From the IMG/VR virus record IMGVR_UViG_3300036853_000446, positions 124,001 through 188,000 of that record: DNA of 64,000 nt. One strand, given 5' to 3'. This document shows positions 18,011 to 39,703 of this stretch, piece after piece. The notes under the pieces were generated by a model. The model had not been told where the DNA came from and ran no database searches. It saw nothing but the letters and a program-made list of their open reading frames with translations. The first letter of the stretch is position 1, and every line of letters starts with the position of its first letter. The position numbers and the translations under genes are program-made.

Positions 18011-18096
18011 TGGTACCCGAGGAGGGATTCGAACCCTCAATGCCTCGCGGCACCGCATTTTAAGTGCAGGTGGCTATTCCGTTCGCCTACTCGGGC
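18011..18096 (-). tRNA. trnL: tRNA-Leu(TAA), encoded CCA
   Basis: CTGCA-CT TAA AA-TGCGG, TTCGAAT. Confidence 0.88.
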
Positions 18097-18165
18097 AAAG
18101 TTTGCTTCGTCTCTACGCCACGTAACGCTTCCTCTTGTGAGCCATCACGTTGAAAGGAGATGCGG

Positions 18166-18672
18166 ATGACACTGACCCATGATTATGACCGCCGCTGGCT
18201 AAAGACGGCTGCGGCACGCCTTCCTGGCAGCCTATTTTATCACGGAACAGCAAGTGACTTTGATGCGTTTGACCTATCTGCTTCCGGCGCACGTGACTTC
18301 GGAGACTTTGGGTTCGGAGTATATTTGACCCCCAGTACTACGATGGCTCGAGGATATGCCTATGCCAGCGCAAAGCGGACACACGGTGAACCTAAAGTCC
18401 TCACCGTCAGTGTGCGTCTCCACAACACAGCTGATTTTGACGACCCGAAACTACAGAGCCAGATCGCTGAAACGCTGGCTATTCCATTTCCTCACAAGGC
18501 GTTGACAACCGGTACACGACAGACACGCCCTCGCTCTGAGGCAATAGCTATCACGGACTACGTGCGCGCTTTGGGTTATGACAGTGGCCTCGCACGCAAT
18601 GGAAAGGAACTCGTTGTCTATGATCCCCGCGCGATAACGATTGAGTCCGTGCAACCGGCGTCCGAAGCCTAG
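18166..18672 (+). CDS. ADP-ribosyltransferase-like protein with HDYDRR leader
   Basis: YHGT, GFGVYLT, A..YA, GYDSG, ELVVYDP. Confidence 0.75.
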   Translation: MTLTHDYDRRWLKTAAARLPGSLFYHGTASDFDAFDLSASGARDFGDFGFGVYLTPSTTMARGYAYASAKRTHGEPKVLTVSVRLHNTADFDDPKLQSQIAETLAIPFPHKALTTGTRQTRPRSEAIAITDYVRALGYDSGLARNGKELVVYDPRAITIESVQPASEA

Positions 18673-18679
18673 GGAGCAA

Positions 18680-18710
18680 CGGCTATGCCATTCGCCTACC
18701 CGGGCAAAGT
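18680..18710 (-). pseudogene. 5-prime fragment of a tRNA-Leu (duplicate of the 18011-18096 start)
   Basis: ggctatgccattcgcctacccgggcaaagtt vs ggctattccgttcgcctactcgggcaaagtt. Confidence 0.7.
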
Positions 18711-18767
18711 TCTATCGAAACACAGCCGTGCACTGATTACCGCCGCGCGGTGTAAGGGCCTTGTCAG

Positions 18768-19538
18768 ATGCCTCGTGATCGACTCCGCCCATTCTTCTGC
18801 TATTTCGGTGGCAAGTGGCGTGAGGCTTTGAAAAGCTATCCTGAACCTCGATACGGGACCATCATCGAGCCCTTCGCGGGTGCGGCGGGATTTGCGGCGC
18901 GCTACGCAACTCGCAAAGTAATCCTGTGCGAGATTGACCCCATCATCGCAGCAGTATGGCGGTACCTAATCAAGGTGACGGCCAAAGAGATCTTATCTCT
19001 GCCCGATCTCGTATCGGAAGAGACAGTGGACAATTTGATAGTCAGTCAGGAGGCCAAATGGTTGATTGGCTTTTGGCTCAATAAGGGCACTTCAGGTCCT
19101 CGCAAGAGTCCCTCGACATGGATGCGATCGAATGTTCGGCCGAAGTCATACTGGGGCGCTCATATTCGACAGATCCTGGCATCGCAGGTTGATTCCATCC
19201 GGCACTGGGAAATCCACAACTGCAGCTACGTTGATTGCCCGACCCCACTCGAAGCAACTTGGTTCGTCGACCCTCCCTACGAGGTCGCGGGGCAAGCCTA
19301 CAGATTTGGCTCCAAACAGATCGACTATCAGCATCTCGGTGATTGGTGCCAAACAAGACCCGGACAAGTCATCGTTTGCGAGAACGAAGGAGCAACCTGG
19401 CTTCCTTTTCAGGACCTCGCAAGTGTGAAGGCGAGCCCCAGATCCATTGCGCCAAACCGCCGCTCCAAGGAGGTTTGTTGGTTGAGCACGTTTGAAGAGG
19501 ATGCATACCTGCAAGCCTTCATGCGAGGCGTCGTATGA
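18768..19538 (+). CDS. Dam-like N6-adenine DNA methyltransferase
   Basis: YFGGK, EPFAG, FVDPPY. Confidence 0.85.
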   Translation: MPRDRLRPFFCYFGGKWREALKSYPEPRYGTIIEPFAGAAGFAARYATRKVILCEIDPIIAAVWRYLIKVTAKEILSLPDLVSEETVDNLIVSQEAKWLIGFWLNKGTSGPRKSPSTWMRSNVRPKSYWGAHIRQILASQVDSIRHWEIHNCSYVDCPTPLEATWFVDPPYEVAGQAYRFGSKQIDYQHLGDWCQTRPGQVIVCENEGATWLPFQDLASVKASPRSIAPNRRSKEVCWLSTFEEDAYLQAFMRGVV

Positions 19539-19550
19539 ATACGGTGGCCT

Positions 19551-21851
19551 TCAAATCGCCACCTCGATTTCCTTCATCGTAACCGTCCCTTGAATGTCTT
19601 TGCCGTCGAGCCCTTGGATCGTAAGGCTGTTTTCATCGAGGCTGGTGAACTCCGTGAACCAGATTTGACCGACGATGACTGCCATTCGAATCTGGCTCAC
19701 CTGATGAAGCAGGTCTCGCACTCTGCTCTTCGCATCCGCTGCCTGCCCCTCGAGCCACGCCTTGAAGGCCTTTTCCGGATCGGCGGCCTTCGCGTACACG
19801 CTGGAGGCGAGGAAGTCGTCGACCTCGTTCACGAAAGGCGCCATGAGTGACGAGCTGGCCGTATGCTTGCCCGACGCGATCCGCGTCTGGACGTCCTTCA
19901 GGGTCGGCAACGTGCTGAGGCCTTTGAGCGCGACGTGCAGCTCTTTACCGATGTAGACGTCCTGAGCCTTGGCTTGCTTGCCCTTGGGTCCAAACCCGCT
20001 GTAGTCGGTGATGCCCTGTTCCTTGAGCCACTCGGCGCCGTCCGCGCCGTACAGGACCTTGAAGCCGTCGCTCGCCCGCCTCTCGAACCGGTCCTTCAGA
20101 TAGGTGTTGTAAACCTTCTGTCCAGCCCTCGCGATCGTCAGCTCGTATTCGAGTTCGAAGAACCGCTTGGCGCTAGTCGCTTGCACCATGGCGCGGTTGA
20201 TGATCGGCAGCTCGCGGAGATTTATCGAGAGGACACCGGGCGACACGACCTGAACCGCAGTGGCGGGGATCTTTGCCTTCTTCAGCTTTTGCACCGTGTC
20301 GTCGGTGAGCTTCAACGGCAGCGTCTCGACATTGACCAAGCCGTCACGGATGATCGCGTAGTTTCGATAGGTAAACGTCGGGAAGACGTCGGGGACCTTG
20401 GGAAGCTCACCCCCTTTGCGGTCCTTCAGATTGACGGTGCCCTCGCGTCGCACCTGCACCGAGACATTCGGCCGTTCCTCGTTATAGATGAGCGCGCCGA
20501 CGGGCACCCCGTCGGGCATGGGCGTGGCTTCGAACTTCAGAGGCGCAATTCCCGTCTCGATGTCCGCAAGTCGTGTCTTCAGGTTATCGAGAAGGATGCC
20601 CTTGGCGACTTTCATCTCGCGCCTGATCTCGTCGACCTCCTTCTGTTCCTCCGCGGTCAGACCCGCGTCCTGGACCCGCTGACGGCCGATCCGATTGTAT
20701 TTGAACAGGTCCGAGTCGAGCAGCAGCCGGTTTCCTTCGTCCTCGCTGATGATCCTGAGCAGATCGAGCACCGTGAAAGCATTCTCGTCGGGAACCGCCT
20801 CGGCGTCATAACCCTGCTGGTACCGGAGCCACGGGTCGAAGCAGGCGAGCGTTGCCTCCTCGACAAACGCGGCGTACTTCTGCTTTCCGAAACAACCCGA
20901 CCAAAGTCTGATGAGCCGCACATCGCCGATGGTCTTCAGCAGCTTGAGCACGACGTCTGTCGCCATGCGCTGGCCGTAGAGGGCCACTGCCGCGTAAGCT
21001 GCGGCGATACTGCTCTCGTAGGTGGCGTGGGCGAAGTCAATCCTCACTGGCTCCCCCTTCCCCTCCACCGCAGGTGACAGGTACCAAACCTCGTCGACCT
21101 GCTGAGGTACCGTGACCTTGCCGCCCTCGACCTTGAAGGTCAGCAACGTCGCCCCGTCGATCGCAAACGCAAACCCCTTGATTGCGTCGGCGTCCAAGTC
21201 GACCTCGATTCGCTTTGCCCCGAGCGGACGCTTCTGCATCGCGGCCTCAAAGGCGGGCTCGTACTTCTTGAAATCCTCGTTGAGGATGAGCGCGCCGCCC
21301 GCCGTCTCCGCCATGGAGACCATGAGCGGGTGGTTGCAATAGTAGCCGTACTCGACGAACGTGGCCGACGCGACCACGGGCACGACGTCCTCGACCGCCT
21401 TCAGGATCTGCGCCTGCGACCACTGGTTGTCATGTCCATCGGACATAAAGAAAAGCGAGCAGACGCCCTTTAGGCCGGCAGCGACCCGCTTCACCTCCTC
21501 CAGGGGCTCCTTGAACCCCGTGAGCCCCACCGGCTTGAGCCAGCGGTCAATCGCCTTGTTGATGTCGCTCAGGTCCTTCAGGCTGGCAACGGGCTCGCCC
21601 TTGACCAAAGTGCCGAATTCGCCCTTACCCGAGAACCAAATCAGGCTGAGGGTGTCCCCCTCGGCAATGAGCCGAGGGAGCTTGTCCTTGAGCTGCGTGC
21701 GGATGAGTGGCAGATCCCCGTACATGCTGCCGGAAACATCGATCGCGACCAAATGGTTGGTCGGTTGCGGTGCGAGCTTCGCGCTGGCGGATCGAGGGAC
21801 CGCAACCGACACCAATTCGAATGGGCTGACCGAGTAGGCTGTCTTGGACAT
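19551..21851 (-). CDS. Large vWA-domain protein
   Basis: AIDVSGSM, FMSDG; long C-terminal region unassigned. Confidence 0.8.
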   Translation of the reverse strand: MSKTAYSVSPFELVSVAVPRSASAKLAPQPTNHLVAIDVSGSMYGDLPLIRTQLKDKLPRLIAEGDTLSLIWFSGKGEFGTLVKGEPVASLKDLSDINKAIDRWLKPVGLTGFKEPLEEVKRVAAGLKGVCSLFFMSDGHDNQWSQAQILKAVEDVVPVVASATFVEYGYYCNHPLMVSMAETAGGALILNEDFKKYEPAFEAAMQKRPLGAKRIEVDLDADAIKGFAFAIDGATLLTFKVEGGKVTVPQQVDEVWYLSPAVEGKGEPVRIDFAHATYESSIAAAYAAVALYGQRMATDVVLKLLKTIGDVRLIRLWSGCFGKQKYAAFVEEATLACFDPWLRYQQGYDAEAVPDENAFTVLDLLRIISEDEGNRLLLDSDLFKYNRIGRQRVQDAGLTAEEQKEVDEIRREMKVAKGILLDNLKTRLADIETGIAPLKFEATPMPDGVPVGALIYNEERPNVSVQVRREGTVNLKDRKGGELPKVPDVFPTFTYRNYAIIRDGLVNVETLPLKLTDDTVQKLKKAKIPATAVQVVSPGVLSINLRELPIINRAMVQATSAKRFFELEYELTIARAGQKVYNTYLKDRFERRASDGFKVLYGADGAEWLKEQGITDYSGFGPKGKQAKAQDVYIGKELHVALKGLSTLPTLKDVQTRIASGKHTASSSLMAPFVNEVDDFLASSVYAKAADPEKAFKAWLEGQAADAKSRVRDLLHQVSQIRMAVIVGQIWFTEFTSLDENSLTIQGLDGKDIQGTVTMKEIEVAI

Positions 21852-21904
21852 GAGCCCCCGGTACACCGGAGGCCCATGCCCTCTGTTCGATCCCCCCTAC
21901 GCCT

Positions 21905-22120
21905 TCAGTGGCGTCGAGATCGACGCAGCGTTGCCAGCGAGATGACGTGCCATCTGCTCTCGCAATCCTCGACGCCTTCCTTAAACTTCAAGTAACTCGC
22001 CTGCTCTTGAGGCGTCAGCAAACGCCCGTTACGGGTCCCGTCGGTAGTGCGGAGCGAGCACATGTGGCAATGCCCCTTGATTCCGCCCCGGCGACGGCGT
22101 CTGCGCTTGTAATGAGCCAT
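21905..22120 (-). CDS. small basic hypothetical protein
   Basis: SD AAGGAAAGGGA; CHMC. Confidence 0.45.
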   Translation of the reverse strand: MAHYKRRRRRRGGIKGHCHMCSLRTTDGTRNGRLLTPQEQASYLKFKEGVEDCESRWHVISLATLRRSRRH

Positions 22121-22263
22121 TCGAGATCCCTTTCCTTACCGGCGTCACCGGCGTGGTTGGGATCTCGTCTCGGCAAACCGAGCATATGGCGAATGGGCGA
22201 GACATTTAGCGGAAGCATACGAGTGCGTCCGGAGGAATCAAGTTCTGAGGTCCCGGTTCCGGT

Positions 22264-22893
22264 TCAGTGGATGAGCTTCGCGATGTCCTGCCAGGTTTCG
22301 AGTTCTGCTCTCCAACGCCCGATATCTTCTTCGGTCGTACGATTCTCGCCGTTGATGGTGATGCTGATCCCACCCGCTGCCGCCCGAGCCAAGTACTTGA
22401 GCTTCAACTTGGCGACGTCGCGGAGGATCCCGAAATCGGCCTGAGGAAAATCCTTAATAAACTCCAGGACTTCAGACTCCTTCGAATACATGCCAAGCCC
22501 TGCCCACTGAACGTGCTTCTGGGAATCGAGGTACATGACGCCCGCTAGGTCCATGTACGTGCTGGCCTTCGGCTTGTTCCATCGCCCCGTCTTCGGATTT
22601 TCCGTCTGGCTCATGAAGCGGAAGCCCTTTTTCGGCTTCATTTCGAGCCAGTACCGGATCTTGCACCGCAGCTTGAAGCTGTACGGGTAGTCGTCGACGT
22701 TGTACGCCGTCTGCTCGCTGTCGTGGCCGTAGAGCGGCGTGCCACGACTCGCCACCCTTGCTCCCGCGACGCGCTCGGCCAGACCGAGAAGCTCGCTCGC
22801 GAGTCGCTGCCGCTCGGGATGGCGAGTCTGAGCGTACGCGAGGATTTCGTGAAGCTCACGGGTCAGGTGCTCGGGGCTGGCAATTTTCTGCAT
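22264..22893 (-). CDS. KIASP-leader protein
   Basis: MQKIASPEHLTRELHEILAYAQ..PER..LA..L..LAERVA. Confidence 0.8.
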   Translation of the reverse strand: MQKIASPEHLTRELHEILAYAQTRHPERQRLASELLGLAERVAGARVASRGTPLYGHDSEQTAYNVDDYPYSFKLRCKIRYWLEMKPKKGFRFMSQTENPKTGRWNKPKASTYMDLAGVMYLDSQKHVQWAGLGMYSKESEVLEFIKDFPQADFGILRDVAKLKLKYLARAAAGGISITINGENRTTEEDIGRWRAELETWQDIAKLIH

Positions 22894-22994
22894 CGGTGAT
22901 CTCGCTCTCCTCGTAACGGAGACCATCAAACGAAAACTGCCCGGTGCTGCCTGCCCGTCCGACGAGCACGCAGGTCGACGGCACCGCTCCCAAC

Positions 22995-23324
22995 CTAAAG
23001 CAGATTTGCGCCGCTGGATGCAGCTGCCTCGACGGGATGACCTTCGAAATAGAAGGAGACCGTACCCGGCGCGTTGGATTGAATCCGAGTCAGCCCCAGG
23101 CGGAGCAGGCTCTTCATGTCGTCGCCCATCACGGAAAGGTTGTTGTTCACCTTCGCCGTGAGCATGTGAATCTGATCCTGGACGAAATATTTGTGCTCGA
23201 GAATCTTCGTTGGCGCCAGGTTGCTCACGAAACGCCCGAGGTGGCTGAGCTTTGGTGGAAGCGGATAGTCTCCGCTCCCGTAGGAATTGTCTGCTGCCGC
23301 GATGCGCTCGTAGGAGTAGGTCAT
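22995..23324 (-). CDS. hypothetical protein with YSYER leader variant
   Basis: MTYSYERIAAA; TCGTTTTATCG 13 nt upstream. Confidence 0.7.
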   Translation of the reverse strand: MTYSYERIAAADNSYGSGDYPLPPKLSHLGRFVSNLAPTKILEHKYFVQDQIHMLTAKVNNNLSVMGDDMKSLLRLGLTRIQSNAPGTVSFYFEGHPVEAAASSGANLL

Positions 23325-23347
23325 GTCCTGCAGCTCCGATAAAACGA

Positions 23348-24010
23348 TCAGTGGTAGTCGACCTTCACACCGAGGGTCGCCCATGTCTTGCGAAACATGT
23401 CCAGGCTAATGAAGCGCCGCGCCCGCTCGTGGTTATCCCGCATCCAAGCGTAGAAGGTCTGCGCGTCCCGCTTCTTCTGCGGGTGGTAAGACGTGTCTTG
23501 GAAGAAGCCCGGCTTTCCGGGCGGCCCCTCCATGGCATGGTGATCGGTGATCCGGAAATCCAAGGGAGACGACACGACTTCGATGTAGCCCTTGTCACGT
23601 TGCGGGATCCGGAACTCGAAACTCTCCCCGTTCGGCTCGACGTCGATCGCCCTCAGGTCGGTCATCTCGATGGATATCTCCGTCGGAAAGTCCACTTGAA
23701 CGTCTGTGATAAACCGACAAATCGCGTCGAACCCGCCGCGGGACCCCTCGTCTACGAAAAACCCGCCCATACGCGCAAACCACTCATCGTGTTTGCCCTG
23801 ATACGAGTACGTCAACATAACCGTCATCTCGCGGCATTTCTTCCCGCGCTTCCCGGCATCCGTCAGGTCTGTGACGCGGAGCGAGTCGCTGTACCGGTGA
23901 ACCCGCACCTGGTCGTTCTGAAAGGTCTTGCCGAGCGGCAAACTGCCGGCCGTCAGGTAACGGCGGGCAACACGGTACCGCTGGACGACGCGGGCGACGA
24001 GAGAGGCCAT
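23348..24010 (-). CDS. hypothetical protein with RVV.RY / VARRYL leader
   Basis: MASLVARVVQRYRVARRYLTAG. Confidence 0.75.
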   Translation of the reverse strand: MASLVARVVQRYRVARRYLTAGSLPLGKTFQNDQVRVHRYSDSLRVTDLTDAGKRGKKCREMTVMLTYSYQGKHDEWFARMGGFFVDEGSRGGFDAICRFITDVQVDFPTEISIEMTDLRAIDVEPNGESFEFRIPQRDKGYIEVVSSPLDFRITDHHAMEGPPGKPGFFQDTSYHPQKKRDAQTFYAWMRDNHERARRFISLDMFRKTWATLGVKVDYH

Positions 24011-24042
24011 AACGGTCATGGGACGACAATAGAAAAAATCGG

Positions 24043-24111
24043 GGCTGCGGCGGGGAATCGAACCCCTCAAACCCCCTTCACAGAGGGGCCCACTTCCAAA
24101 GTAACCGCAGC
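24043..24111 (-). tRNA. trnH: tRNA-His(GTG), shortened D-arm
   Basis: GCTGCGG/CCGCAGC acceptor, CCCCT-CT GTG AA-GGGGG, TTCGATT. Confidence 0.6.
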
Positions 24112-24121
24112 ATACACCGAG

Positions 24122-24194
24122 TCAGAGTGGGAAGACTCGAACTTCCAACCCCTTGGCCCCCAGCCAAGTGCTCTGCCAATTGAGCTACACCCTG
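24122..24194 (-). tRNA. trnP: tRNA-Pro(GGG)
   Basis: CTTGG-CT GGG GG-CCAAG. Confidence 0.9.
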
Positions 24195-24306
24195 AGAATC
24201 CCATGCAGCCGCCGTTGAAGGCCGTCTGCATGGGTGGGATCGTCGTTCTTGGGCGCGACGATCCAGCGAGCCGTACGGGGATGGACCCAAGTCCATACGG
24301 CTCTCG

Positions 24307-24391
24307 AGGAAGGCGGAGGTATCGATCCCCAGACCCTTGCGAGTCCCCTTCGTTCAGCAAACGAGGCCAGCACCTTGCTGGTTCACCTTCC
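24307..24391 (-). tRNA. trnS: tRNA-Ser(GCT), A54 T-loop
   Basis: CTCGT-TT GCT GA-ACGAA, long variable arm, ATCGATA loop. Confidence 0.75.
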
Positions 24392-24409
24392 GAATGTCCT
24401 TCACCTTCG

Positions 24410-24482
24410 CGCCCCCGGCAGGACTCGAACCTGCGTCACCGAGCTTCGGAAACTCGTGCCTCATCCACTAGGCTACGGAGGC
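24410..24482 (-). tRNA. trnR: tRNA-Arg(CCG)
   Basis: CGAGT-TT CCG AA-GCTCG. Confidence 0.9.
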
Positions 24483-24571
24483 ATTGTGAAACGAAGGATC
24501 GAACTCCGACCTCTGCATTCCAACTGAAATACGGCCCCTCCTTGCGGATCTTCTTTTGAAGAACCGCGTGC

Positions 24572-24901
24572 ATGATCCACGACTACCAGCGACGCACGTC
24601 CGGTCAGCAACGATACGATGCACTCATCAGACAAATCGTCTCCGAGGTAGACGACGTCACCGAACCGGTCAAGCGGGTTGTCACGAAACTTCCAAGGCTC
24701 ATCGACACATTGGAAGAACTGGTCGAAAACGACGACGAGCTGAGGTCAACAGATCCCCGGGGTGGCAAACGGTACGGAATCGATCAGGTTCTCACGGAAA
24801 TGCGTAAGAGGCTCGAAGCGGTCAAGGATGCAACGACCGACCTCGAATGGGCGTACGACGAGCTAAACAATCGCTTCCAAAAGAACGTCCCGCGCACCTA
24901 A
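24572..24901 (+). CDS. helical protein with HDYQRR leader
   Basis: MIHDYQRR; TCTTTTGAAG 11 nt upstream. Confidence 0.75.
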   Translation: MIHDYQRRTSGQQRYDALIRQIVSEVDDVTEPVKRVVTKLPRLIDTLEELVENDDELRSTDPRGGKRYGIDQVLTEMRKRLEAVKDATTDLEWAYDELNNRFQKNVPRT

Positions 24902-24910
24902 CCAAGTCAG

Positions 24911-24982
24911 CGTCCCCGGAAGGAGTCGAACCTTCGTCGTGCCTTTAGGAAAGGCCCACTCTATCCATTGAGCTACGGGAAC
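24911..24982 (-). tRNA. trnR: tRNA-Arg(CCT)
   Basis: GGCCT-TT CCT AA-AGGCA. Confidence 0.85.
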
Positions 24983-24988
24983 AAAGCG

Positions 24989-25075
24989 CAGAGAGCTGAG
25001 GTAACGATCCCCACACCCTTACGAGTGCCAATCCGCGTCCGACGGATGCCCGAACCTCTCGGGGGTTAACTCTCC
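24989..25075 (-). tRNA. trnS: tRNA-Ser(GGA), atypical (C33, ATCGTTA T-loop)
   Basis: ATCCG-TC GGA CG-CGGAT, long variable arm. Confidence 0.6.
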
Positions 25076-25081
25076 AAACAG

Positions 25082-25154
25082 TCTGGGCGGCCCGACTTGA
25101 ACGGGCAACCTCCGCGCCCCAAACGCGGCACTCTACCAATTGAGCTACGCCCAG
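25082..25154 (-). tRNA. trnP: tRNA-Pro(TGG)
   Basis: CCGCG-TT TGG GG-CGCGG. Confidence 0.92.
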
Positions 25155-25168
25155 ATTAAACTTCGGCC

Positions 25169-25534
25169 ATGGCTGGCGACCGATTCATCTACTTCGAAGA
25201 TCGTGTGCCGACACACGAGGAGATCCGCACAATCCTCGAGAACTACCTCGGCGGCTGTGGCACCGTCACCGAGCCCCAACCGAACTGGTGGATGATCGAC
25301 CTGCCCGGTCGCAACACCTCGACCTTCAAGGGGATCCAAGGAAGCGGGCCCGACGTCTTCACGGACCCCGACTTTGACGTGCGGTGGATCGAGGTCATCT
25401 TCCAGCGAACCGCCGGGCTCCCGCCTTCGCTCGACGTCCTGACCCGCCACGCCGACAGCTTCACGGGTGACGTCGCCAGCTCGTTGGCGCGCACGTTTGC
25501 GGCCTTCTTCCGCGGACGGCTCGAAGACACCTGA
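25169..25534 (+). CDS. hypothetical protein
   Basis: Clean ORF between tRNA and convergent gene. Confidence 0.65.
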   Translation: MAGDRFIYFEDRVPTHEEIRTILENYLGGCGTVTEPQPNWWMIDLPGRNTSTFKGIQGSGPDVFTDPDFDVRWIEVIFQRTAGLPPSLDVLTRHADSFTGDVASSLARTFAAFFRGRLEDT

Positions 25535-25606
25535 GTCAATGACTCGCCTTCCTCTCGAAAAGGAGGACCCGCTCGAGAAAGACCCGCCTGAGGAATATGT
25601 GCAGTC

Positions 25607-26140
25607 TCACTGGTTATCGTACCGGCAGCTCGCGCAATCGGAGTCGCGCGGCTCATCTTCGATGCTGCCACAGCTGCACCCCGTCCAGCGGCCATGTGAG
25701 TGTGACCGTGAACCAGATGAACCCGATGAGCCAGACGAGCCCCCCGTGCCGACAGTGAATAGCCAGACGCTACGGTCGGTCCAGATCAAACGACCCAGTG
25801 TCACCTTCGAAGTCTGACCGCTCTTCTTGCGTACCGTGACTTGGTCCCCGGGACTACCAACGCTCGTCAGCCGAACGCCCCACGATCCGTCACGCAGCTT
25901 GGCCCACGTGGCATCTTCGCCGCCTCGACCAAGCTTGGTCATCCGCCGAATCTCGGCCTCGCTCGGCTCCGGGCCCTCGACGTAAGGGCCCTTCGATGCC
26001 ACCTCGTCCTGTGCCATCAGATCGTCAGCAAGGCGCCCGAGCTTCCTTGCCAGCTTGACCCTCGACGGGCTCGACGATTGGCAATAGGCGAGAATGCTCT
26101 TCAAACCGTCCTGCAGGTGCCGTGGCGAGCGGATCTTCAT
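25607..26140 (-). CDS. KIASP-leader protein, GS-linker and Cys-rich tail
   Basis: MKIRSPRHLQDGLKSILAY..PSR..LA..L..LA; C-terminal CSCG..CASC. Confidence 0.8.
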   Translation of the reverse strand: MKIRSPRHLQDGLKSILAYCQSSSPSRVKLARKLGRLADDLMAQDEVASKGPYVEGPEPSEAEIRRMTKLGRGGEDATWAKLRDGSWGVRLTSVGSPGDQVTVRKKSGQTSKVTLGRLIWTDRSVWLFTVGTGGSSGSSGSSGSRSHSHGRWTGCSCGSIEDEPRDSDCASCRYDNQ

Positions 26141-28450: not shown

Positions 28451-28456
28451 AAGAAG

Positions 28457-30528: not shown

Positions 30529-30534
30529 ATGAAG

Positions 30535-34343: not shown

Positions 34344-34416
34344 TGGCACGGCAGGGGGGAATCGAACCCGACCTTCTGGAGTTTTGGAGGCTCCATTACA
34401 ACCTTTGCTCTGCCGT
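34344..34416 (-). tRNA. trnW: tRNA-Trp(CCA), encoded CCA, atypical D-arm
   Basis: GGAGC-CT CCA AA-ACTCC; ACGGCAG/CTGCCGT G CCA. Confidence 0.7.
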
Positions 34417-34443
34417 ATGAAAACGAGAGTTTGACCTCGTTTG

Positions 34444-34515
34444 AGTCCCCGGTGGGAATCGAACCCACGCTCGCGGTTTTGCAGACCACAGCCTTGACCA
34501 CTTGGCTACGAGGAC
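34444..34515 (-). tRNA. trnC: tRNA-Cys(GCA)
   Basis: GTGGT-CT GCA AA-ACCGC; U73. Confidence 0.9.
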
Positions 34516-35328: not shown

Positions 35329-35350
35329 GGTGCCTTTCACGTACACCGAG

Positions 35351-35423
35351 TGGAGCCGGGGAGCATCGAACTCCCAGCCTCTCGCTTGCAGGGCGAGCGC
35401 TCTCCCACTTGAGCTACGGCCCC
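35351..35423 (-). tRNA. trnA: tRNA-Ala(TGC), C33
   Basis: G3:U70; CTCGC-CC TGC AA-GCGAG. Confidence 0.9.
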
Positions 35424-35504
35424 GAAATGCTTTGCCAATTACCCGATGCGATAGCACCAGATCTCAAAAACTTCTTTTGATGTGATATCCTTTTCAGAGG
35501 AAGC

Positions 35505-36140
35505 ATGCACGACTACGATAGACGCAGACTCGCCGCGGCGGAGACCACCGAAACCGTTACAAACATCCACTGGATGTACGTGGAGCACGAGAAGATCGCG
35601 CAGCGCGCCCTGATCGACCATCAAGCAAGACTCGGCAAGATCGAAACGAAGACACTGATCCGGGAAAACGTAATACGCCTCACAGGCACCACGACGGACG
35701 GCAGGACCTTCCGGATTGAAACGACCTTCTTTGTCAAGGAGATGATCGTTCAGTCCGAGACGCGAACGATCGTCGAAGGGACCGTGTCCATGGGACCGGT
35801 CCCCGATGTACTTCCAAGAGTGGAAGCTTCCGTCTCGAAGCTCTTGCAGGGTTTGACGAGTCTTGGGCTCGAAAAGCGCGACTACTTCAACTTTGCGAAA
35901 GGATGGGCCCACATCGCCCACGACATTGAGGCTTGGCGTCGTGGTGATGTCGTGAACACAAAGGGTTTGCGGTCGAGCTTGAGCTATCTCGTAAAGGAAA
36001 CCAAAAACCTCACCGACAAGCTACGAAGCACGTTCCCGGCAGGCGAGTTGCCTAAAGAGCAGCGGCAGCTCATCGATCTACTCGAGGAGGCCAGCAAAGC
36101 CCTCGGGGCCGCCGCGCGTGGTATTCCAGATATTGGTTGA
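35505..36140 (+). CDS. hypothetical protein with HDYDRR leader
   Basis: MHDYDRRRLAAA; TCTTTTGATG upstream and AGAGGAAG SD. Confidence 0.8.
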   Translation: MHDYDRRRLAAAETTETVTNIHWMYVEHEKIAQRALIDHQARLGKIETKTLIRENVIRLTGTTTDGRTFRIETTFFVKEMIVQSETRTIVEGTVSMGPVPDVLPRVEASVSKLLQGLTSLGLEKRDYFNFAKGWAHIAHDIEAWRRGDVVNTKGLRSSLSYLVKETKNLTDKLRSTFPAGELPKEQRQLIDLLEEASKALGAAARGIPDIG

Positions 36141-36141: not shown

Positions 36142-36170
36142 TGGTGGAGCCGAAGGGGATTTGAACCCCC
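36142..36170 (-). pseudogene. 3-prime fragment of tRNA-Ala (T-arm + CGGCTCCACCA)
   Basis: GGGGGTTCAAATCCCCTTCGGCTCCACCA directly after tRNA-Glu CCA. Confidence 0.7.
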
Positions 36171-36175: not shown

Positions 36176-36252
36176 TGGTGTCCCGTGCCGGATTCGAACC
36201 GACGTTACCGCCTTGAGAAGACAGCGTACTGGGCCATCTATACGAACGGGAC
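36176..36252 (-). tRNA. trnE: tRNA-Glu(CTC), encoded CCA
   Basis: CTGTC-TT CTC AA-GGCGG. Confidence 0.85.
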
Positions 36253-36312
36253 AAATAGAACGTGACCGATGCCAGCCGAGCGTGCAAGCTTCCGAGGAGC
36301 ACCAAGGTCATG

Positions 36313-36383
36313 CAGCCCCGCGGAGAATCGGACTCCGACTGCTCGCTTGAAAGGCGAGTCTCATACCCTTAGAGGACGGGGCC
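36313..36383 (-). tRNA. trnE: tRNA-Glu(TTC), TCCG T-loop
   Basis: CTCGC-CT TTC AA-GCGAG. Confidence 0.8.
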
Positions 36384-37556
36384 TTACAGAGAATCCATGA
36401 ACTGCTGCAGCGCCCGGGGGAGAGGCTTCCCGAGCACCACGGCCAGGAAGGACTCGGCAAAGTTTTCCTCCCACGATGTCGCCCCGTAGTCGGAAGCATA
36501 AACGCCGCTCTGATGCTCAGACACCGGAAACTCGACGTCGCCCGACACGTTCTTCATGGCGATCGCGTCGTGCAGGGCCTGCCAGACGCCGCTTTCCTTC
36601 TCGTCTCGGAATCGCTTGAGCAAGGGGATCTGCTTTCGCATCACCTCGCGCGGTGTTCTCTCCGCGTATTCACGGCTGCGCGGCGAGATGATGGTGTCCG
36701 GGTCATCCGGGTACTCCTCGCGCTGATGCAGCTCGAAGAGTTTCATGTATTCGTCGGCCGCCTTTTGACGCTCGGCCGGGGTAAACACGATCGTCTCGCC
36801 CTTCTCGTGAATCTTGTGGAAGCGTTCGAACTTCTCACCGCGGATGAATTTCGTGTGGTAGCGATGCCCGAATTCGTGGATGAGGGTCAGCACGCTGTTG
36901 CGTTCTGGCGTCGCGTACATGCTGAGCGTGATGGTGTCGGTCGCGTGGGCGTACGAGCCAGCCACGAGCCCACCCGAGCCAGGCCGCGGGTCATATGTGC
37001 CTGAAGGACGAAGGTCCTTGCGAATGAAGACCTTGCCGTAGAGAACCTCTGGGAACCTTCGGTGGACCAGTTCACTCGCTTTGTCGAGCGTCGCGACGGC
37101 TTCCGCCGTATCCGTTACGCCCTCTAGCGGGATGATCCGGAAAGGGCCGTGTTTGAACTCGTCGGCCTCGTCCCGCATCAGCTCCTGCACTTTAGGCAAG
37201 CCCTCGTCCAGCTGACGAAACCAATGATCAAACCACTGTTGGCCAATCGAGTAGAGGTCACGATGATGCTGAATGCCATAGATGGCATTGAACACTTCCT
37301 GAAGCTTTCCGACGAATTCCATGAAGAATTCCCTATCAGCGTGGTCGAGGTCAGGTAGCCATTCGGTGCGGACACTCAGGCGGTCACCGCCTAGGAAGAA
37401 CACCCCGAGGATCTTGCCAAAGGCACGAAACTCGTCCTCTGCCTGCTTCCACTTCTCGCCACGAATGAGGCGCTCGATTCCCTCGAGCATCGGGGCCAGT
37501 TGCGTCCGAGCGAGAAAACGTCGAACGACATTGGCGACCAGCGGTTCCAGCATCAT
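36384..37556 (-). CDS. Zincin metallopeptidase (anthrax-LF/MPTase-like) with V.RRFL leader
   Basis: LIHEFGHRYH, SDYGATSWEENFAESF; MLEPLVANVVRRFLAR. Confidence 0.8.
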   Translation of the reverse strand: MMLEPLVANVVRRFLARTQLAPMLEGIERLIRGEKWKQAEDEFRAFGKILGVFFLGGDRLSVRTEWLPDLDHADREFFMEFVGKLQEVFNAIYGIQHHRDLYSIGQQWFDHWFRQLDEGLPKVQELMRDEADEFKHGPFRIIPLEGVTDTAEAVATLDKASELVHRRFPEVLYGKVFIRKDLRPSGTYDPRPGSGGLVAGSYAHATDTITLSMYATPERNSVLTLIHEFGHRYHTKFIRGEKFERFHKIHEKGETIVFTPAERQKAADEYMKLFELHQREEYPDDPDTIISPRSREYAERTPREVMRKQIPLLKRFRDEKESGVWQALHDAIAMKNVSGDVEFPVSEHQSGVYASDYGATSWEENFAESFLAVVLGKPLPRALQQFMDSL

Positions 37557-37582
37557 TCAGGCTAATCCATTAAAAGAGGATG

Positions 37583-37653
37583 AGCCCCCACCGGGAATCG
37601 GACCCGGACCTGCCGAATACCAATCGACTGCTCGACCTTCGAGCTATGAGGGC
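37583..37653 (-). tRNA. trnT: tRNA-Thr(GGT), TCCG T-loop
   Basis: GTCGA-TT GGT AT-TCGGC. Confidence 0.85.
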
Positions 37654-37658: not shown

Positions 37659-38099
37659 TCATCTGCCGAACGGGCGGTGCTTCTGCTTCCAGAGTGCCTC
37701 CGCCGCGTCGGTATGTGAGGTTGCCGGGCGGAACTTCTGCCCTGAAATGCGCTCCGCCCAGGCGTACATCGCGGTCGCGAGCCCCTGCCGGCGAAACTCG
37801 GGATCGACCTCGATGGCCCCCTCGAAATCTTTCTCCGATGGGTCGCCGTTCCAAGGCCCATAGAACAGGTCGCCCACGACGCGCTCCCCATCGTCTGATG
37901 GTACCGTCGCAAGGATACTAAAGTCGTCGAAATCCGAAGACGGTTTACGTCGCCAGTAGAGGGTAAAGTCTTTGAACGTTGTCTCGCGTATGAACTTCGA
38001 TTTCTCCCGAGGGAAGTCCTTCGTCTTGGCCCGCCACTTCTCGGGGTTGTCGCTGAGACTGGCGAGATATCGCTGGGCAACGCGCGACAGTGTCGACAT
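37659..38099 (-). CDS. GNAT acetyltransferase with RVAQRYL leader
   Basis: IEVDPEFRRQGLATAMY motif A; MSTLSRVAQRYLAS. Confidence 0.8.
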   Translation of the reverse strand: MSTLSRVAQRYLASLSDNPEKWRAKTKDFPREKSKFIRETTFKDFTLYWRRKPSSDFDDFSILATVPSDDGERVVGDLFYGPWNGDPSEKDFEGAIEVDPEFRRQGLATAMYAWAERISGQKFRPATSHTDAAEALWKQKHRPFGR

Positions 38100-38106
38100 G
38101 GGATCT

Positions 38107-38949
38107 TTAGGCGGGGACGGTCTCATCCGACCTGTTCTCGACGCCGAGTCGGTCCCATCTTACCGTGAAGCCGTGCCCCGGCTTGTACTCGAGATACTGT
38201 TTCGCCACAAGCCAGGCGAGCCTCAGGACGAGCGTGATGGGTAGCGCGGCGAACGTTCCGAAGCCGAGCTGCGCAAAAAGCCCGCCGATCGCCGACTCGG
38301 GCATCGACGCGAGCAACTCCACGAGCGAGATACCCCCGGTGAAGCCCGCGACGATGCCGGGAATGTCCCAGGTGATCTCCAGGACCGAGATCCAGACGTA
38401 GATGTAAATGGCCGCGTAAACGGGCCGCCTCAGGGTCGGGATGTGCTTCCGAAACAGGTTGTCGATCGTCTCCGCGCCTTCACGAATCTTCGACAGTGCG
38501 CGCTGCAGCCACGGCACATCTTTAACCAGACGGCGGATGAGGTCGGTCAGTCCGGGCATCTTGTGCTGGTCGATGAAGAAGAGACTCAAAGGCAAATGCG
38601 ACGTCGCCTTGTGCAGCACGCTCATCAGGGCGCGCTTACCCTCGGCCATGGCGTCCTTGATGCCCCTGACCAGATTGGGCAGGCTCGCGTCCTCCAGGCC
38701 GAGGCCGCGCTTGATGGCAGCCCACGCCTCGGGCGCGCGTTTGAAGAGCCCGACAAGGCGCGAGACAGCGCTCGTGATCCCGGCGACGACTTCTTTTGAC
38801 GACGCGGTACGGGTCTCCCAGGCGGCCTCGACGAGGGCAACGAGCGCCCCTCTCGGCGGCAGACGGGAGGCAACACGCCCCGTTGGATAGGCCCGTTCGA
38901 CGGCGAGCCGGATGAAATACCGGTCCCTGACTCTCAGGCTGATGTCCAC
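38107..38949 (-). CDS. hypothetical protein, hydrophobic C-terminus, RVRDRY leader
   Basis: MDISLRVRDRYFIRLA..GRVAS. Confidence 0.7.
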   Translation of the reverse strand: MDISLRVRDRYFIRLAVERAYPTGRVASRLPPRGALVALVEAAWETRTASSKEVVAGITSAVSRLVGLFKRAPEAWAAIKRGLGLEDASLPNLVRGIKDAMAEGKRALMSVLHKATSHLPLSLFFIDQHKMPGLTDLIRRLVKDVPWLQRALSKIREGAETIDNLFRKHIPTLRRPVYAAIYIYVWISVLEITWDIPGIVAGFTGGISLVELLASMPESAIGGLFAQLGFGTFAALPITLVLRLAWLVAKQYLEYKPGHGFTVRWDRLGVENRSDETVPA

Positions 38950-38998
38950 GTCAGTGGCCGGCGGATAAGTGAAAGCGGCGCCTCCGAATCGTGCGGAG

Positions 38999-39069
38999 CG
39001 CCCCGTATGGAAATCGAATCCATCTCATCCGCGAGACAGGCGGACTGCGACCCCAGTCGCATCACGGGC
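38999..39069 (-). tRNA. trnD: tRNA-Asp(GTC)
   Basis: TCCGC-CT GTC TC-GCGGA; ATGGA-TTCGATT-TCCAT; G73. Confidence 0.7.
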
Positions 39070-39205
39070 GAAACGTAGGCGAGAAGGAGGAAGTCAAAGG
39101 AGGCCGTCAACCGCGTCGCCGCCGCATACCTCAGTCAGTTCACGCTTTCGAGCGGTGGGCATGATTTTCGACGCCGAGCTTATCCATTTGTAACGGCCTC
39201 TTCTC

Positions 39206-39697
39206 GTGAACAAGATCGCGAGCGCCGGGGAGCTGCAGTCAGAGTTGAGACGGCTCCTGAACGAGGCGGTTGCACCGGGAGTCTCCCGCCGCGCAATGGC
39301 CGCCGAGCTGGTTGCGCTCGCCGGTCGGGTGGCGCGCGACAGGCCCTATCCCGAGCAGGACGTGCGCGGATCGGGCGAGTGGGCCGTCTATTTCGAGACC
39401 GAGGCACCGAAGACGATCCATCGGTGGAAATTTCACACCCAGGCGCAGGCGACGGACGAAGCCAAGAAAGCTCAGAAGGAGCAAGGCGGCTTCGTCACGG
39501 TCATGCGCAAGGGCCTCGACGTCGTCGAGGTGGGCCCCGGCGGCAAGGTCACGAAGAACGCCACGGTTCTGAACGTGGTGGCGCGCTACGTGGCTCGACA
39601 AATACCAACAATCAGAACAATTGCGGACAGCTCCGAATCCTGGGCTCGAACCAGGGACCTACGTGTTAACAGCACGTCGCTCTACCAACTGAGCTAA
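39206..39697 (+). CDS. KIASP-leader protein
   Basis: MNKIASAGELQSELRRLL..SRRAMAAELVALAGRVA; C-terminal NVVARYVAR. Confidence 0.8.
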   Translation: MNKIASAGELQSELRRLLNEAVAPGVSRRAMAAELVALAGRVARDRPYPEQDVRGSGEWAVYFETEAPKTIHRWKFHTQAQATDEAKKAQKEQGGFVTVMRKGLDVVEVGPGGKVTKNATVLNVVARYVARQIPTIRTIADSSESWARTRDLRVNSTSLYQLS

Positions 39698-39703
39698 TCC
39701 GGA
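39631..39703 (-). tRNA. trnN: tRNA-Asn(GTT)
   Basis: ACGTG-CT GTT AA-CACGT. Confidence 0.93.

What the first reader, a model, noticed from the sequence alone, without database searches (positions are those of the whole stretch)
18011..39703. tRNA fragments bracket inserted tagged genes: the array as a cassette landing pad
The ART gene 18166-18672 lies between tRNA-Leu(TAA) and a ~31-bp copy of its 5-prime end (18680-18710). The DYDRR gene 35505-36140 lies between tRNA-Ala and an orphan Ala 3-prime end (36142-36170). A T-arm-like remnant (GGAGTTCGATCCTTC, about 24487-24505) sits next to the 24572 gene. Stops at 36384 and 37659 abut tRNA 5-prime ends. No integrase is visible. Inference: effector cassettes with their own promoter and tag are gained and lost by recombination at tRNA homology.
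Basis: partly seen in the sequence, partly recalled or inferred. Interest (0 to 1): 0.62.

Follow-up and report, generated by a model that had tools for sequence, protein, structure and literature searches.

The report
Clipped tRNA genes beside phage cargo genes
In the tRNA gene cluster of a 407-kb soil phage, small opposite-strand genes that share an N-terminal peptide fill the gaps between tRNA genes. The partial tRNA copies next to them are real, but they look like scars of deletions and unequal recombination rather than integration sites.

Summary
The window is part of a 407,634-bp IMG/VR phage contig.

Six related metagenomic contigs keep the same tRNA order. The gaps between those tRNAs are empty or hold different opposite-strand genes, most starting with M-x-YDYDRR or RVARRYLA-like peptides.

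**Ala piece (36142-36170).** It matches the 3' end of a relative's intact tRNA-Ala at 26 of 27 bases. That tRNA overlaps the last codons of the relative's DYDRR gene. A second relative has the same gene in the same gap with both Ala tRNAs intact, so the window's piece is what remains of a clipped tRNA.

**Leu piece (18673-18711).** It is the 5' half of a second tRNA-Leu. It is closer to a relative's Leu(CAA) than to the neighbouring Leu(TAA). It is joined at the anticodon loop to an ADP-ribosyltransferase gene that is 3-5 codons shorter than its homologues.

**Mechanism.** Break positions inside tRNAs differ between cases (about 33, 46, 50 and 59), and no integrase was found. Nuclease genes of homing-endonuclease type sit in or beside these clusters. 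The landing-pad picture is therefore partly supported, but a mechanism based on tRNA homology is not shown.

The parts
15616..16215 (-). HNH endonuclease gene at the edge of the tRNA cluster, next to tRNA-Leu(TAG) 16248-16331. It is a candidate homing-type nuclease.
   Evidence: Pfam HNH 42.3 bits, E 8.6e-11. Relatives carry one to three HNH genes at this place.
17152..17985 (-). HD-domain protein, named poly(A) polymerase in JGI records. It is the conserved neighbour of tRNA-Leu and was used as the anchor to find relatives.
   Evidence: The tRNA-Leu to HD junction is kept in L004, L005, L007, L031, L033 and L036.
18011..18096 (-). Intact tRNA-Leu(TAA).
   Evidence: ARAGORN; Rfam tRNA 46.8 bits.
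18128..18143 (+). T-rich upstream box (TTCCTCTTGTGAGCC) 23 nt before the ART start. A Shine-Dalgarno-like AAAGGAG follows it.
   Evidence: It is 19/22 identical to the box in front of the 390-aa gene in L026 and L029. The box class occurs 17 times in the window against 7.4 +/- 2.7 in shuffles. Promoter function is inferred.
18166..18672 (+). ADP-ribosyltransferase gene (ART-PolyVal family) on the strand opposite the tRNAs. The N-terminus is MTLTHDYDRR. G+C is 0.54 and third-position G+C 0.51, against about 0.60 and 0.75 for the genome.
   Evidence: Seven of its eight nearest homologues extend 3-5 residues further at the C-terminus. Homologues in L008 and L009 are not near tRNAs.
18673..18711 (-). 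5' half of a second tRNA-Leu: 6 leader bases plus about positions 1-33, ending at the anticodon loop. It lies directly against the ART stop codon.
   Evidence: 28/31 to Leu(TAA) of the window. 25/26 to Leu(CAA) of L031 over positions 1-26 (E 1e-8), and 4 against 9 mismatches over 33 positions.
18768..19538 (+). DNA methyltransferase-like gene on the strand opposite the tRNAs, G+C 0.54.
   Evidence: PHROG 56, E 2.5e-16; weak Pfam MethyltransfD12. Homologues at 41-61% identity occur in 34 other viral contigs, most of 11-85 kb.
24487..24545 (-). Probable decayed tRNA. The T arm at 24492-24508 is intact and a D-arm-like stretch is present. There is no anticodon arm and the acceptor is unpaired.
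   Evidence: No relative was available for this stretch, so its origin was not identified.
24572..24901 (+). Tagged opposite-strand gene (MIHDYQRR, 109 aa, G+C 0.55). The T-rich box lies at 24551-24561. The stop codon is 8 nt from the 3' end of tRNA-Arg(CCT) at 24910-24982.
35350..35423 (-). Intact tRNA-Ala(TGC).
   Evidence: It is 88% identical to Ala(TGC) of L028.
35472..35482 (+). T-rich upstream box (TTCTTTTGATG) 22 nt before the start of the DYDRR gene.
35505..36140 (+). DYDRR-family gene (211 aa, MHDYDRR) on the strand opposite the tRNAs. Function unknown.
   Evidence: Thirteen representative homologues, nine of them starting MHDYDRR or MFDYDRR. The AlphaFold2 model has pLDDT 87.8 with a disordered first 27 residues. 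No match to a solved fold.
36142..36170 (-). Remains of a tRNA-Ala: T arm, acceptor 3' strand and CCA. It lies 1 nt from the stop of the DYDRR gene and 5 nt from tRNA-Glu(CTC).
   Evidence: 26/27 to Ala(TGC) of L046 positions 49-74. By gene order it stands where Ala(GGC) is in five relatives. An 8-nt repeat puts the stop codon just before it.
36176..37653 (-). Conserved backbone: tRNA-Glu(CTC) 36176-36252, tRNA-Glu(TTC) 36312-36383, the 390-aa gene 36384-37556 and tRNA-Thr(GGT) 37582-37653.
34346..34421 (-). tRNA-Trp(CCA) with an unusual D arm, not called by ARAGORN. It is part of the conserved scaffold.
   Evidence: 75-87% identical to L026, L028 and L029. It aligns with the called tRNA-Trp of L046 and shows compensatory changes in the anticodon stem.

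Best explanation
The tRNA cluster of this huge-phage lineage is a conserved scaffold of tRNA genes.

**Layout (shown).** The gaps between the tRNAs are filled exactly by small genes on the opposite strand. Each gene starts a few tens of bases from the 5' end of one tRNA. Each ends against, or overlapping, the 3' end of the next.

**Gene content (shown).** These genes belong to a shared pool. They carry interchangeable N-terminal peptides and a common T-rich upstream box, and they differ from relative to relative.

**Origin of the partial tRNAs (inferred).** The partial tRNAs are scars of this turnover. Unequal or illegitimate recombination between co-infecting relatives or sister copies, followed by deletions, clips a redundant tRNA. 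The piece packed against the neighbouring gene's end survives.

**Trigger (speculative).** The breaks may be started by free-standing homing-type nucleases (HNH in the window, PD-(D/E)XK in relatives), as shown for SegB in the T4/T6 tRNA cluster.

**Scarless exchange (plausible, not shown).** Whole gaps may also be swapped by ordinary homologous recombination in the conserved tRNAs.

No integrase is involved.
For: **Packing.** Nine of 10 opposite-strand genes start 14-81 nt from a tRNA-like 5' end. Seven of 10 end 0-11 nt from, or overlap, the end of a tRNA or tRNA piece.

**Variable gaps.** The tRNA order is conserved while the gaps are empty or differently filled. Similarity stops at the tRNA ends.

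**Ala piece.**
- In L046 the last six codons and the stop of the DYDRR homologue are the antisense of the 3' end of an intact tRNA-Ala.
- The window's piece matches that tRNA at 26/27, with one compensatory stem change.
- In L045 the same gene sits in the same gap with an intact Ala(GGC).

**Leu piece.** It is closer to Leu(CAA) of L031 than to the adjacent Leu(TAA), and the ART gene is 3-5 codons short.

**More scars in relatives.**
- L028 has a 25/26 copy of the 3' end of its own Ala(GGC) between two paralogous genes whose upstream regions are also alike.
- L046 has a 17/17 piece of another Ala(GGC) type 22 nt behind its own Ala(GGC), beside a PDDEXK_5 nuclease gene.

**tRNA turnover.** Ala(GGC) genes fall into three sequence types. 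One is nearer to Ala(TGC) genes than to the other Ala(GGC) types, and the two Ala genes of L046 are each other's closest relatives.

**Precedent.** SegB cuts within tRNA genes, and its cleavage sites share a motif that I read as the T-loop sequence. It produces tandem repeats of a tRNA plus a C-terminally shortened gene (PMC13096335).
Against: - The relatives are only 52-88% identical at the protein level, so no recent event is caught and the order of events is reconstructed rather than observed.
- Fragments can only be recognised inside tRNAs, so it cannot be said that breaks prefer tRNAs.
- No nuclease gene lies inside the window's cluster; there is only the HNH gene at its edge. No cleavage has been tested.
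- The near-identity of the fragments (25/26, 26/27) beside strongly diverged genes could instead mean that the pieces are kept by selection.
- Contig-level read data showed no variant lacking the ART gene.
Confidence: 0.58

Rival explanations
1. Genes with their promoter and tag are gained and lost by homologous recombination that uses tRNA sequence as the homology, and the fragments are the footprints of that process.
For: - tRNAs are the only stretches that stay alike at the DNA level between relatives.
- Paralogous tRNAs in one cluster share long identical ends, and in L046 they evolve together.
- The unit of Ala 3' end plus DYDRR gene sits behind Ala(TGC) in L046 but in the Ala(GGC) position in the window and L045.
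- Leu(CAA) of L031 shares 26/28 of its 3' end with Leu(TAA) of the window.
- Related precedents exist: recombination between repeated regulatory motifs shuffles genes in T4-type phages (PMC2839356), and phage recombinases act on diverged sequences (PMC2327257 and PMC3945230, listed).
Against: - Recombination within homologous tRNA stretches gives intact hybrid tRNAs, not fragments.
- Every fragment seen has a non-homologous joint on one side: the ART coding end, the 3' end of Glu(CTC), or a gene's upstream region.
- Break positions are scattered.
- No hybrid tRNA was demonstrated.
Confidence: 0.25
2. The fragments are kept because they have a function for the opposite-strand gene. They could carry its last codons and stop, or act as an RNA 3'-end hairpin or a processing signal. 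They would then travel with the gene as part of the unit.
For: - In L046 the gene's last six codons and stop are encoded by the antisense of the tRNA.
- Stop codons lie 0-11 nt from tRNA ends in 7 of 10 genes.
- The fragments are 96% identical to intact tRNAs, while the adjoining genes are 37-52% identical.
Against: - In the window an 8-nt repeat uncouples the reading frame from the fragment.
- The one change in the L028 fragment breaks a T-stem pair.
- Neither fragment folds better than shuffled sequence.
- No terminator-like site is found there.
- L045 has lost the piece and has another hairpin in its place.
Confidence: 0.12
3. The genes are small integrative elements moved by a tyrosine or serine integrase encoded elsewhere in the 407-kb genome or in the host, with tRNA genes as attachment sites.
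For: Imperfect direct repeats of a tRNA end around an insert are the classic signature of such elements (established knowledge; Leu case).
Against: - No integrase was found in the 40 ORFs tested.
- The Leu repeat is the 5' end, upstream of the intact gene, which is the reverse of the usual layout.
- Crossover positions differ (about 33, 46, 50 and 59).
- One junction lies inside a shortened coding sequence.
- The inserts are single genes of 0.3-0.6 kb.
Confidence: 0.04
4. The partial tRNA matches are chance similarities.
For: Short T-loop-like strings do occur by chance, about 5 per window on both strands in shuffles.
Against: E-values are 2e-5, 1e-8 and 6e-7. Both pieces lie on the tRNA strand inside the cluster, and relatives have intact tRNAs at the corresponding places.
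Confidence: 0.01

Closest known systems
SegB homing endonuclease in the tRNA gene region of T4 and T6 (PMC2330249; PMC13096335)
   Same: A free-standing nuclease gene lies in a phage tRNA cluster. It cuts inside tRNA genes, and its cleavage sites share a motif that I read as the T-loop sequence. Repair gives preferred inheritance of the region and tandem repeats whose joints lie between a tRNA and a C-terminally shortened gene. The L028 tandem unit and the shortened ART gene look like this.
   Different: The nucleases here are HNH and PD-(D/E)XK types, not GIY-YIG. None has been tested. In the window the nuclease gene is at the edge of the cluster, not beside the fragments. The events are old and fixed, not laboratory amplifications.
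[quoted passage not shown]
   Same: Small non-essential genes, each with its own regulatory motif, lie in a hypervariable region. Insertions, deletions and replacements between close relatives are bounded by repeated conserved motifs.
   Different: The repeated conserved elements here are tRNA genes plus a T-rich box, not promoter and stem-loop units. Recombination between them and mini-circles has not been shown.
Phage morons
   Same: Single genes with lower G+C and their own upstream signal sit between backbone genes and are present or absent among relatives.
   Different: They are confined to the gaps of a tRNA cluster, lie on the opposite strand, and share N-terminal peptides. A promoter and terminator have not been demonstrated.
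Integrase-borne islands and prophages at tRNA genes
   Same: A partial direct repeat of a tRNA lies next to foreign genes.
   Different: There is no integrase. The fragments have the wrong polarity, the break positions vary, and the inserts are single genes.
tRNA gene duplication, anticodon change and pseudogene remnants at rearrangement endpoints (known from organelle and bacterial genomes; from my own knowledge)
   Same: Partial tRNA copies mark the endpoints of rearrangements. Paralogous tRNAs change anticodon and are lost when redundant.
   Different: Here this happens in a virus, and it is coupled to the exchange of protein-coding cargo.

Membership tests
Integrase-mediated element at a tRNA attachment site | Integrase or recombinase gene in or next to the insert | tested here: not met
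   No such Pfam family in 40 ORFs of the cluster and the window. The rest of the 407-kb contig was not examined.
Integrase-mediated element at a tRNA attachment site | An intact tRNA at one end, with a displaced copy of its 3' part at the far end downstream of it | tested here: not met
   The Leu repeat is the 5' half and lies upstream of the intact gene. The Ala piece lies upstream of the intact Ala(TGC) and is not a copy of it: it matches Ala(TGC) of L046 at 26/27, while the window's own Ala(TGC) matches it over only about 10 bases.
Integrase-mediated element at a tRNA attachment site | The same crossover position at every site | tested here: not met
   Breaks are at about tRNA positions 33, 46, 50 and 59.
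Phage moron | Present or absent between conserved backbone genes in relatives | tested here: met
Phage moron | Base composition different from the genome | tested here: met
   G+C is 0.54-0.56 in 18166, 18768, 24572 and 35505, against about 0.60 for the genome.
Phage moron | Own promoter and terminator | tested here: inconclusive
   A shared T-rich box lies 10-23 nt upstream. No sigma-70-type promoter or intrinsic terminator was found. No transcript data exist.
Homing-endonuclease-driven exchange in a tRNA cluster (SegB-like) | Free-standing nuclease gene in or next to the tRNA cluster, varying among relatives | tested here: met
   HNH gene at 15616-16215, with one to three HNH genes in relatives. 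PDDEXK_5 genes lie beside Ala tRNAs in L029 and L046 only, with a weak match to PDB 2ost.
Homing-endonuclease-driven exchange in a tRNA cluster (SegB-like) | The nuclease cuts inside tRNA genes of relatives | not testable with these tools
   Needs a cleavage assay.
Homing-endonuclease-driven exchange in a tRNA cluster (SegB-like) | Tandem units with joints between a tRNA and a shortened gene | tested here: inconclusive
   L028 has a tandem unit that begins with a tRNA 3' piece, and the ART gene is shortened and joined to a tRNA half. A link to a nuclease is not shown.
PeSL-type modular shuffling | Repeated regulatory motif at both borders of the shuffled genes | tested here: inconclusive
   The T-rich box is seen upstream only. 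The other border is a tRNA end.
ART-PolyVal (PF18760) ADP-ribosyltransferases, for gene 18166-18672 | Profile match above the curated cut-off | tested here: met
   40.9 bits against 31.2. A conserved YHGT...GxG.YLTPS core is shared with homologues. Catalytic activity was not tested.
Integron gene cassette | An attC site on each cassette and an IntI integrase | tested here: not met
   No integrase and no repeated element downstream other than tRNA ends.

The most novel reading that the evidence does not exclude
In this clade of huge soil phages the tRNA cluster may serve as a dedicated exchange platform for a pool of opposite-strand cargo genes. Their short, interchangeable N-terminal peptides (M-x-YDYDRR, RVARRYLA-like, KIASP...L..EL) would act as address labels, for example for packaging into the virion and delivery with the DNA. 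That would fit the ADP-ribosyltransferase. Nuclease-triggered recombination at the tRNA scaffold would move label-plus-gene units between co-infecting phages.
Probability: 0.2. Interest if true: 0.8.

Novelty: new variant of a known kind. Interest (0 to 1): 0.55.

Why it matters
Huge phages carry the largest viral tRNA sets, and these are usually discussed only in terms of codon supply. Here the cluster also appears to be the most variable gene-content region. It holds a recognisable class of tagged genes, including an ADP-ribosyltransferase, wedged between conserved tRNAs.

If the scaffold and cargo arrangement is general, it offers a simple way to find fast-turnover genes that may act on the host in uncultivated phages. 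It would also extend the SegB and PeSL ideas from T4-type phages to a very different lineage. The interchangeable N-terminal peptides make a testable case for protein addressing in such phages.

Tried and rejected
- **Annotated phage genomes.** Megablast of 18000-26000 against them found nothing.
- **IMG/VR relatives.** Relatives found with the 771-aa and 390-aa proteins are only 31-50% identical and have no tRNA cluster at that place. They were of no use for gene-order comparison.
- **ART search in IMG/VR.** The ART profile found only the window's own contig.
- **L005 genes.** The opposite-strand genes of L005 in front of tRNA-Leu are not homologues of the ART or methyltransferase genes.
- **Rfam.** A permissive Rfam scan did not report the fragments. 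It did point to uncalled tRNA-like genes.
- **Read laying.** Both runs are held only as assembled contigs. No joint that skips the ART gene was seen, which is not evidence against one. One 342-nt contig is an 88% variant of the ART gene's 3' end, and its likeness stops at 18673.
- **Promoter and terminator scans.** Scans for sigma-70 promoters and intrinsic terminators around both genes were negative.
- **Fold search.** The confident model of the 211-aa protein matched no solved structure (best TM 0.29), so "effector" is unproven for that gene.
- **Homology across the Ala gap.** BLASTP found no homology between the 211-aa protein and the 192-aa family that fills the same gap in L026, L028 and L046. 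A profile comparison was prepared but not run.
- **Simple insertion into tRNA-Leu.** This was rejected because no 3' half lies between Leu(TAA) and the HD-domain gene; only 25 nt lie there.

Full report
**What the window is**

The window is part of IMGVR_UViG_3300036853_000446, a 407,634-bp viral contig from a soil metagenome. G+C is about 0.60. No annotated phage genome matches it at the DNA level. ARAGORN finds 30 tRNA genes, all on the - strand, between 16248 and 40650.

At least four more tRNA-like genes were missed by ARAGORN. One of them, 34346-34421, is a conserved tRNA-Trp(CCA) with compensatory changes in its anticodon stem.

**Check of the observation**

- **Leu.** A 28/31 copy of the first 25 bases of tRNA-Leu(TAA) (18011-18096) plus 6 leader bases lies at 18681-18711 (E 2e-5). 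The gene between them, 18166-18672 (+), is an ART-PolyVal ADP-ribosyltransferase.
- **Ala.** The gene 35505-36140 (+) begins MHDYDRR. It ends 1 nt from a T arm, acceptor 3' strand and CCA at 36142-36170. tRNA-Ala(TGC) at 35350-35423 lies on its other side.
- **T arm.** A perfect T arm at 24492-24508 (-) lies next to the gene at 24572, which begins MIHDYQRR.
- **Stop codons.** The stop codons at 36384 and 37659 lie 0 and 5 nt from tRNA 5' ends.
- **Integrase.** No integrase family matched any of the 40 window ORFs tested.

**Layout of the cluster**

Ten plausible genes lie on the + strand, opposite to the tRNAs. Nine start 14-81 nt from the 5' end of a tRNA or tRNA-like element. Seven end 0-11 nt from, or overlap, the end of the next one. 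Each gap is therefore filled almost exactly by one gene, tail to tail with a tRNA.

The three genes with the HDY[DQ]RR start have lower G+C (0.54-0.56), as does the methyltransferase-like gene 18768-19538. A T-rich box (TTCTTTTGATG or TTCCTCTTGTGA) lies 10-23 nt before the start codons of 18166, 24572, 35505, 36384-37556 (-) and 25607-26140 (-). This class of motif occurs 17 times in the window, against 7.4 +/- 2.7 in shuffles. The ART copy is 19/22 identical to the box in front of the 390-aa gene in two relatives. That it is a promoter is inferred. Scans for sigma-70 promoters and intrinsic terminators were negative.

**Relatives**

Protein searches with two anchor genes gave metagenomic contigs with the same gene order. 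The anchors were the HD-domain gene 17152-17985 and the 390-aa gene 36384-37556.

*Around the Ala tRNAs.* L026, L029 and L028 are 76, 71 and 69% identical in the 390-aa protein. L045 and L046 were found through the DYDRR protein. All keep the order Thr(GGT), 390-aa gene, Glu(TTC), Glu(CTC), gap A, Ala(GGC), gap B, Ala(TGC), a conserved 100-aa gene.

| Contig | Gap A (Glu(CTC) to Ala(GGC)) | Gap B (Ala(GGC) to Ala(TGC)) |
|---|---|---|
| L026 | HTH gene plus a 209-aa gene | two genes, both starting MAYDYDRR |
| L029 | HTH gene | 18 nt, no gene |
| L028 | a same-strand gene | two paralogues with an RVARRY/F start |
| L045 | a same-strand gene | a DYDRR gene |
| L046 | two same-strand genes | a 203-aa paralogue of the L028 genes |
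| window | nothing | the DYDRR gene |

DNA similarity to the window stops within about 4 nt of the tRNA ends.

*Around tRNA-Leu.* The junction between tRNA-Leu and the HD-domain gene is conserved. The gap before tRNA-Leu is 32 nt in L031. It holds two-component regulator genes in L004, two unknown genes in L005 and two small same-strand genes in L007.

**The Ala piece**

By gene order it stands where Ala(GGC) is in all five relatives. By sequence it is 26/27 identical to positions 49-74 of Ala(TGC) of L046. The match includes the unusual TTCAAAT loop, the encoded CCA and one compensatory stem change.

In L046 that tRNA is intact, and the last six codons and the stop of the DYDRR homologue (52% identical) are its antisense. 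In the window an 8-nt repeat places a stop codon just before the piece. In L045 the homologue (63% by BLASTP) lies in gap B with intact Ala(GGC) and Ala(TGC) on either side.

So the gene is an inherited resident of this neighbourhood, and the gene plus the tRNA 3' end form a linked unit. The window lost the 5' two-thirds of that tRNA, together with gap A, in a deletion that runs up to 5 nt from Glu(CTC).

**The Leu piece**

Aligned with relatives, it extends to 18673, about tRNA position 33. Over those positions it has 4 mismatches to the Leu(CAA) next to the HD-domain gene in L031, against 9 to the window's own Leu(TAA). Over positions 1-26 it matches Leu(CAA) of L031 at 25/26 (E 1e-8) and the window's Leu(TAA) at 22/25 over positions 1-25.

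It is joined directly to the ART stop codon. Seven of the eight nearest ART homologues run 3-5 residues further. No 3' half lies between Leu(TAA) and the HD-domain gene.

The simplest reading is that the order was once Leu(CAA-like), ART gene, Leu(TAA). A deletion or illegitimate joint then removed the 3' half of the first tRNA and the last codons of the ART gene.

The window has another Leu(CAA) at 29602-29685, so the loss would be tolerated. ART homologues at 60-64% identity in L008 and L009 are not near tRNAs. Methyltransferase homologues at 41-61% identity occur in 34 other viral contigs, most of 11-85 kb. Both genes therefore look like imports.

**More scars and tRNA turnover in relatives**

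- L028 carries a 25/26 copy of positions 50-75 of its own Ala(GGC) between its two paralogous genes. The upstream regions of those genes are also about 70% alike by eye. Together these form a tandem unit of tRNA 3' end, gene and upstream region.
- L046 carries a 17/17 piece of the L028-type Ala(GGC) 22 nt behind its own, different Ala(GGC). A PDDEXK_5 nuclease gene lies beside it.
- Ala(GGC) genes fall into three sequence types. One is nearer to Ala(TGC) genes than to other Ala(GGC) genes, and the two Ala genes of L046 are each other's closest relatives.
- The order of tRNA-Trp and tRNA-Cys is swapped between relatives.

tRNA genes in these clusters are therefore duplicated, change anticodon, get replaced and get clipped.

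**Mechanism**

*Shown:*
- a conserved tRNA scaffold with variable gaps;
- tight tail-to-tail packing of genes against tRNAs;
- partial tRNAs at junctions, with scattered break positions (about 33, 46, 50 and 59);
- at least one non-homologous side at each junction.

*Inferred:* the pieces are scars of unequal or illegitimate recombination and deletion. The part of the tRNA packed against the neighbouring gene survives.

*Speculative:* the breaks are started by homing-type nucleases. An HNH gene lies at the edge of the window's cluster. PDDEXK_5 genes lie beside Ala tRNAs in two relatives only. The PDDEXK_5 protein of L046 weakly matches PDB 2ost, which from my own knowledge is the homing endonuclease I-Ssp6803I.

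*Precedent:* SegB in T6 cuts within tRNA genes. Its cleavage sites share the motif RAWTSGAAC, which I read as the T-loop sequence on the opposite strand. It produces tandem repeats of a tRNA plus a C-terminally shortened gene (PMC13096335).

Scarless exchange of whole gaps by homologous recombination in the tRNAs is plausible. It would resemble PeSL shuffling in T4-type phages (PMC2839356). Nothing here demonstrates it.

**The tags**

In 664 kb of window and fetched loci, 16 reading frames start with the YDYDRR-type peptide. Eleven lie within 535 nt of a tRNA, and all eleven are on the strand opposite to it. Only 14% of the sequence lies within 700 nt of a tRNA. These loci are related to each other, so the counts are not independent.

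The peptide is conserved at the N-terminus of two unrelated families, the ART family and the DYDRR family. Codon choice differs between copies, so selection acts on the peptide rather than the DNA.

Homologous protein bodies carry different tags:
- The 192-aa family has MAYDYDRR in L026 and RVARRF/Y in L028 and L046.
- The body of window gene 39206-39697, which has a KIASA...L..EL start, is 72% identical to a gene in L046 that starts MPYDYDR.

In the model of the 211-aa protein the first 27 residues are disordered. What the tags do is unknown. An addressing role is a hypothesis only.

**Verdict**

This is a new variant of known kinds: phage hypervariable regions, morons and nuclease-associated tRNA clusters.

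The main limits are the distance of the available relatives and the lack of raw reads or transcripts.

Noticed in passing
window 27539-27619, 28377-28451, 30530-30605, 34346-34421 (all - strand): These are tRNA-like genes that ARAGORN does not call. The first is Ser(UGA)-like with a long variable arm and C at position 33 (Rfam tRNA-Sec model, 32 bits). The second is a decayed cloverleaf. The third is a CAU-anticodon candidate, also with C33. The fourth is tRNA-Trp(CCA) with an odd D arm, conserved in four relatives with compensatory changes.
   Followed up: partly
window 23348-24070(-), 29015-29422(-), 36384-37556(-), 37659-38126(-), 38107-38949(-); also 22264-22929(-), 25607-26140(-), 39206-39697(+): Two more N-terminal peptide classes recur on otherwise unrelated proteins. 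One is hydrophobic-x-RVAxRYLA-like and the other is KIASPxxLxxEL-like. Homologous protein bodies in relatives carry a different class, so the N-terminal modules look interchangeable.
   Followed up: partly
window 54804-55604 (-) and 46460-46711 (+): There is a second ART-PolyVal gene, with a large insertion in the domain, and a small reading frame. Both start with YDYDRR and both lie 6-14 kb outside the tRNA cluster.
   Followed up: partly
window 34346-34515; L026 5551-5704; L029 8948-9096; L028 11524-11720: The order of tRNA-Trp and tRNA-Cys is reversed in L026 and L029 compared with the window and L028.
   Followed up: no
window 24528-24567 (+): A nearly perfect 10-bp hairpin (GCGGATCTTC, loop TTTT, GAAGAACCGC) lies 4 nt before the start codon of the tagged gene at 24572. 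It contains that gene's T-rich box, and there is no Shine-Dalgarno sequence.
   Followed up: no
L036 3872-4228 and L037 3405-3759: More distant relatives carry a tmRNA gene just after the Leu tRNAs and the HD-domain gene. No tmRNA was found in the window.
   Followed up: no
L003 (JGI contig Ga0683568_0001160): A 78% homologue of the HD-domain protein, with an HNH gene, lies among genes that look bacterial (glycoside hydrolase 2, amidohydrolase, aspartyl-tRNA synthetase). This could be a chimeric assembly or an unusual phage region.
   Followed up: no
window 18516-18673: A 342-nt contig in the likely source sample is an 88% variant of the ART gene's 3' end. Its likeness stops at the ART stop codon and it runs on into different sequence. 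A second ART allele may therefore sit in another context in the same soil.
   Followed up: no
window 28541-28990 (-), 37659-38126 (-), 27657-28376 (+): The cluster also holds a dCMP/cytidine deaminase, a GNAT acetyltransferase and a papain-like peptidase fragment among its unknown genes.
   Followed up: no
window 40740-40756 (-): A T-arm-like hairpin (4 of 5 stem pairs) lies just beyond tRNA-Lys(TTT). It may be another uncalled or decayed tRNA.
   Followed up: no
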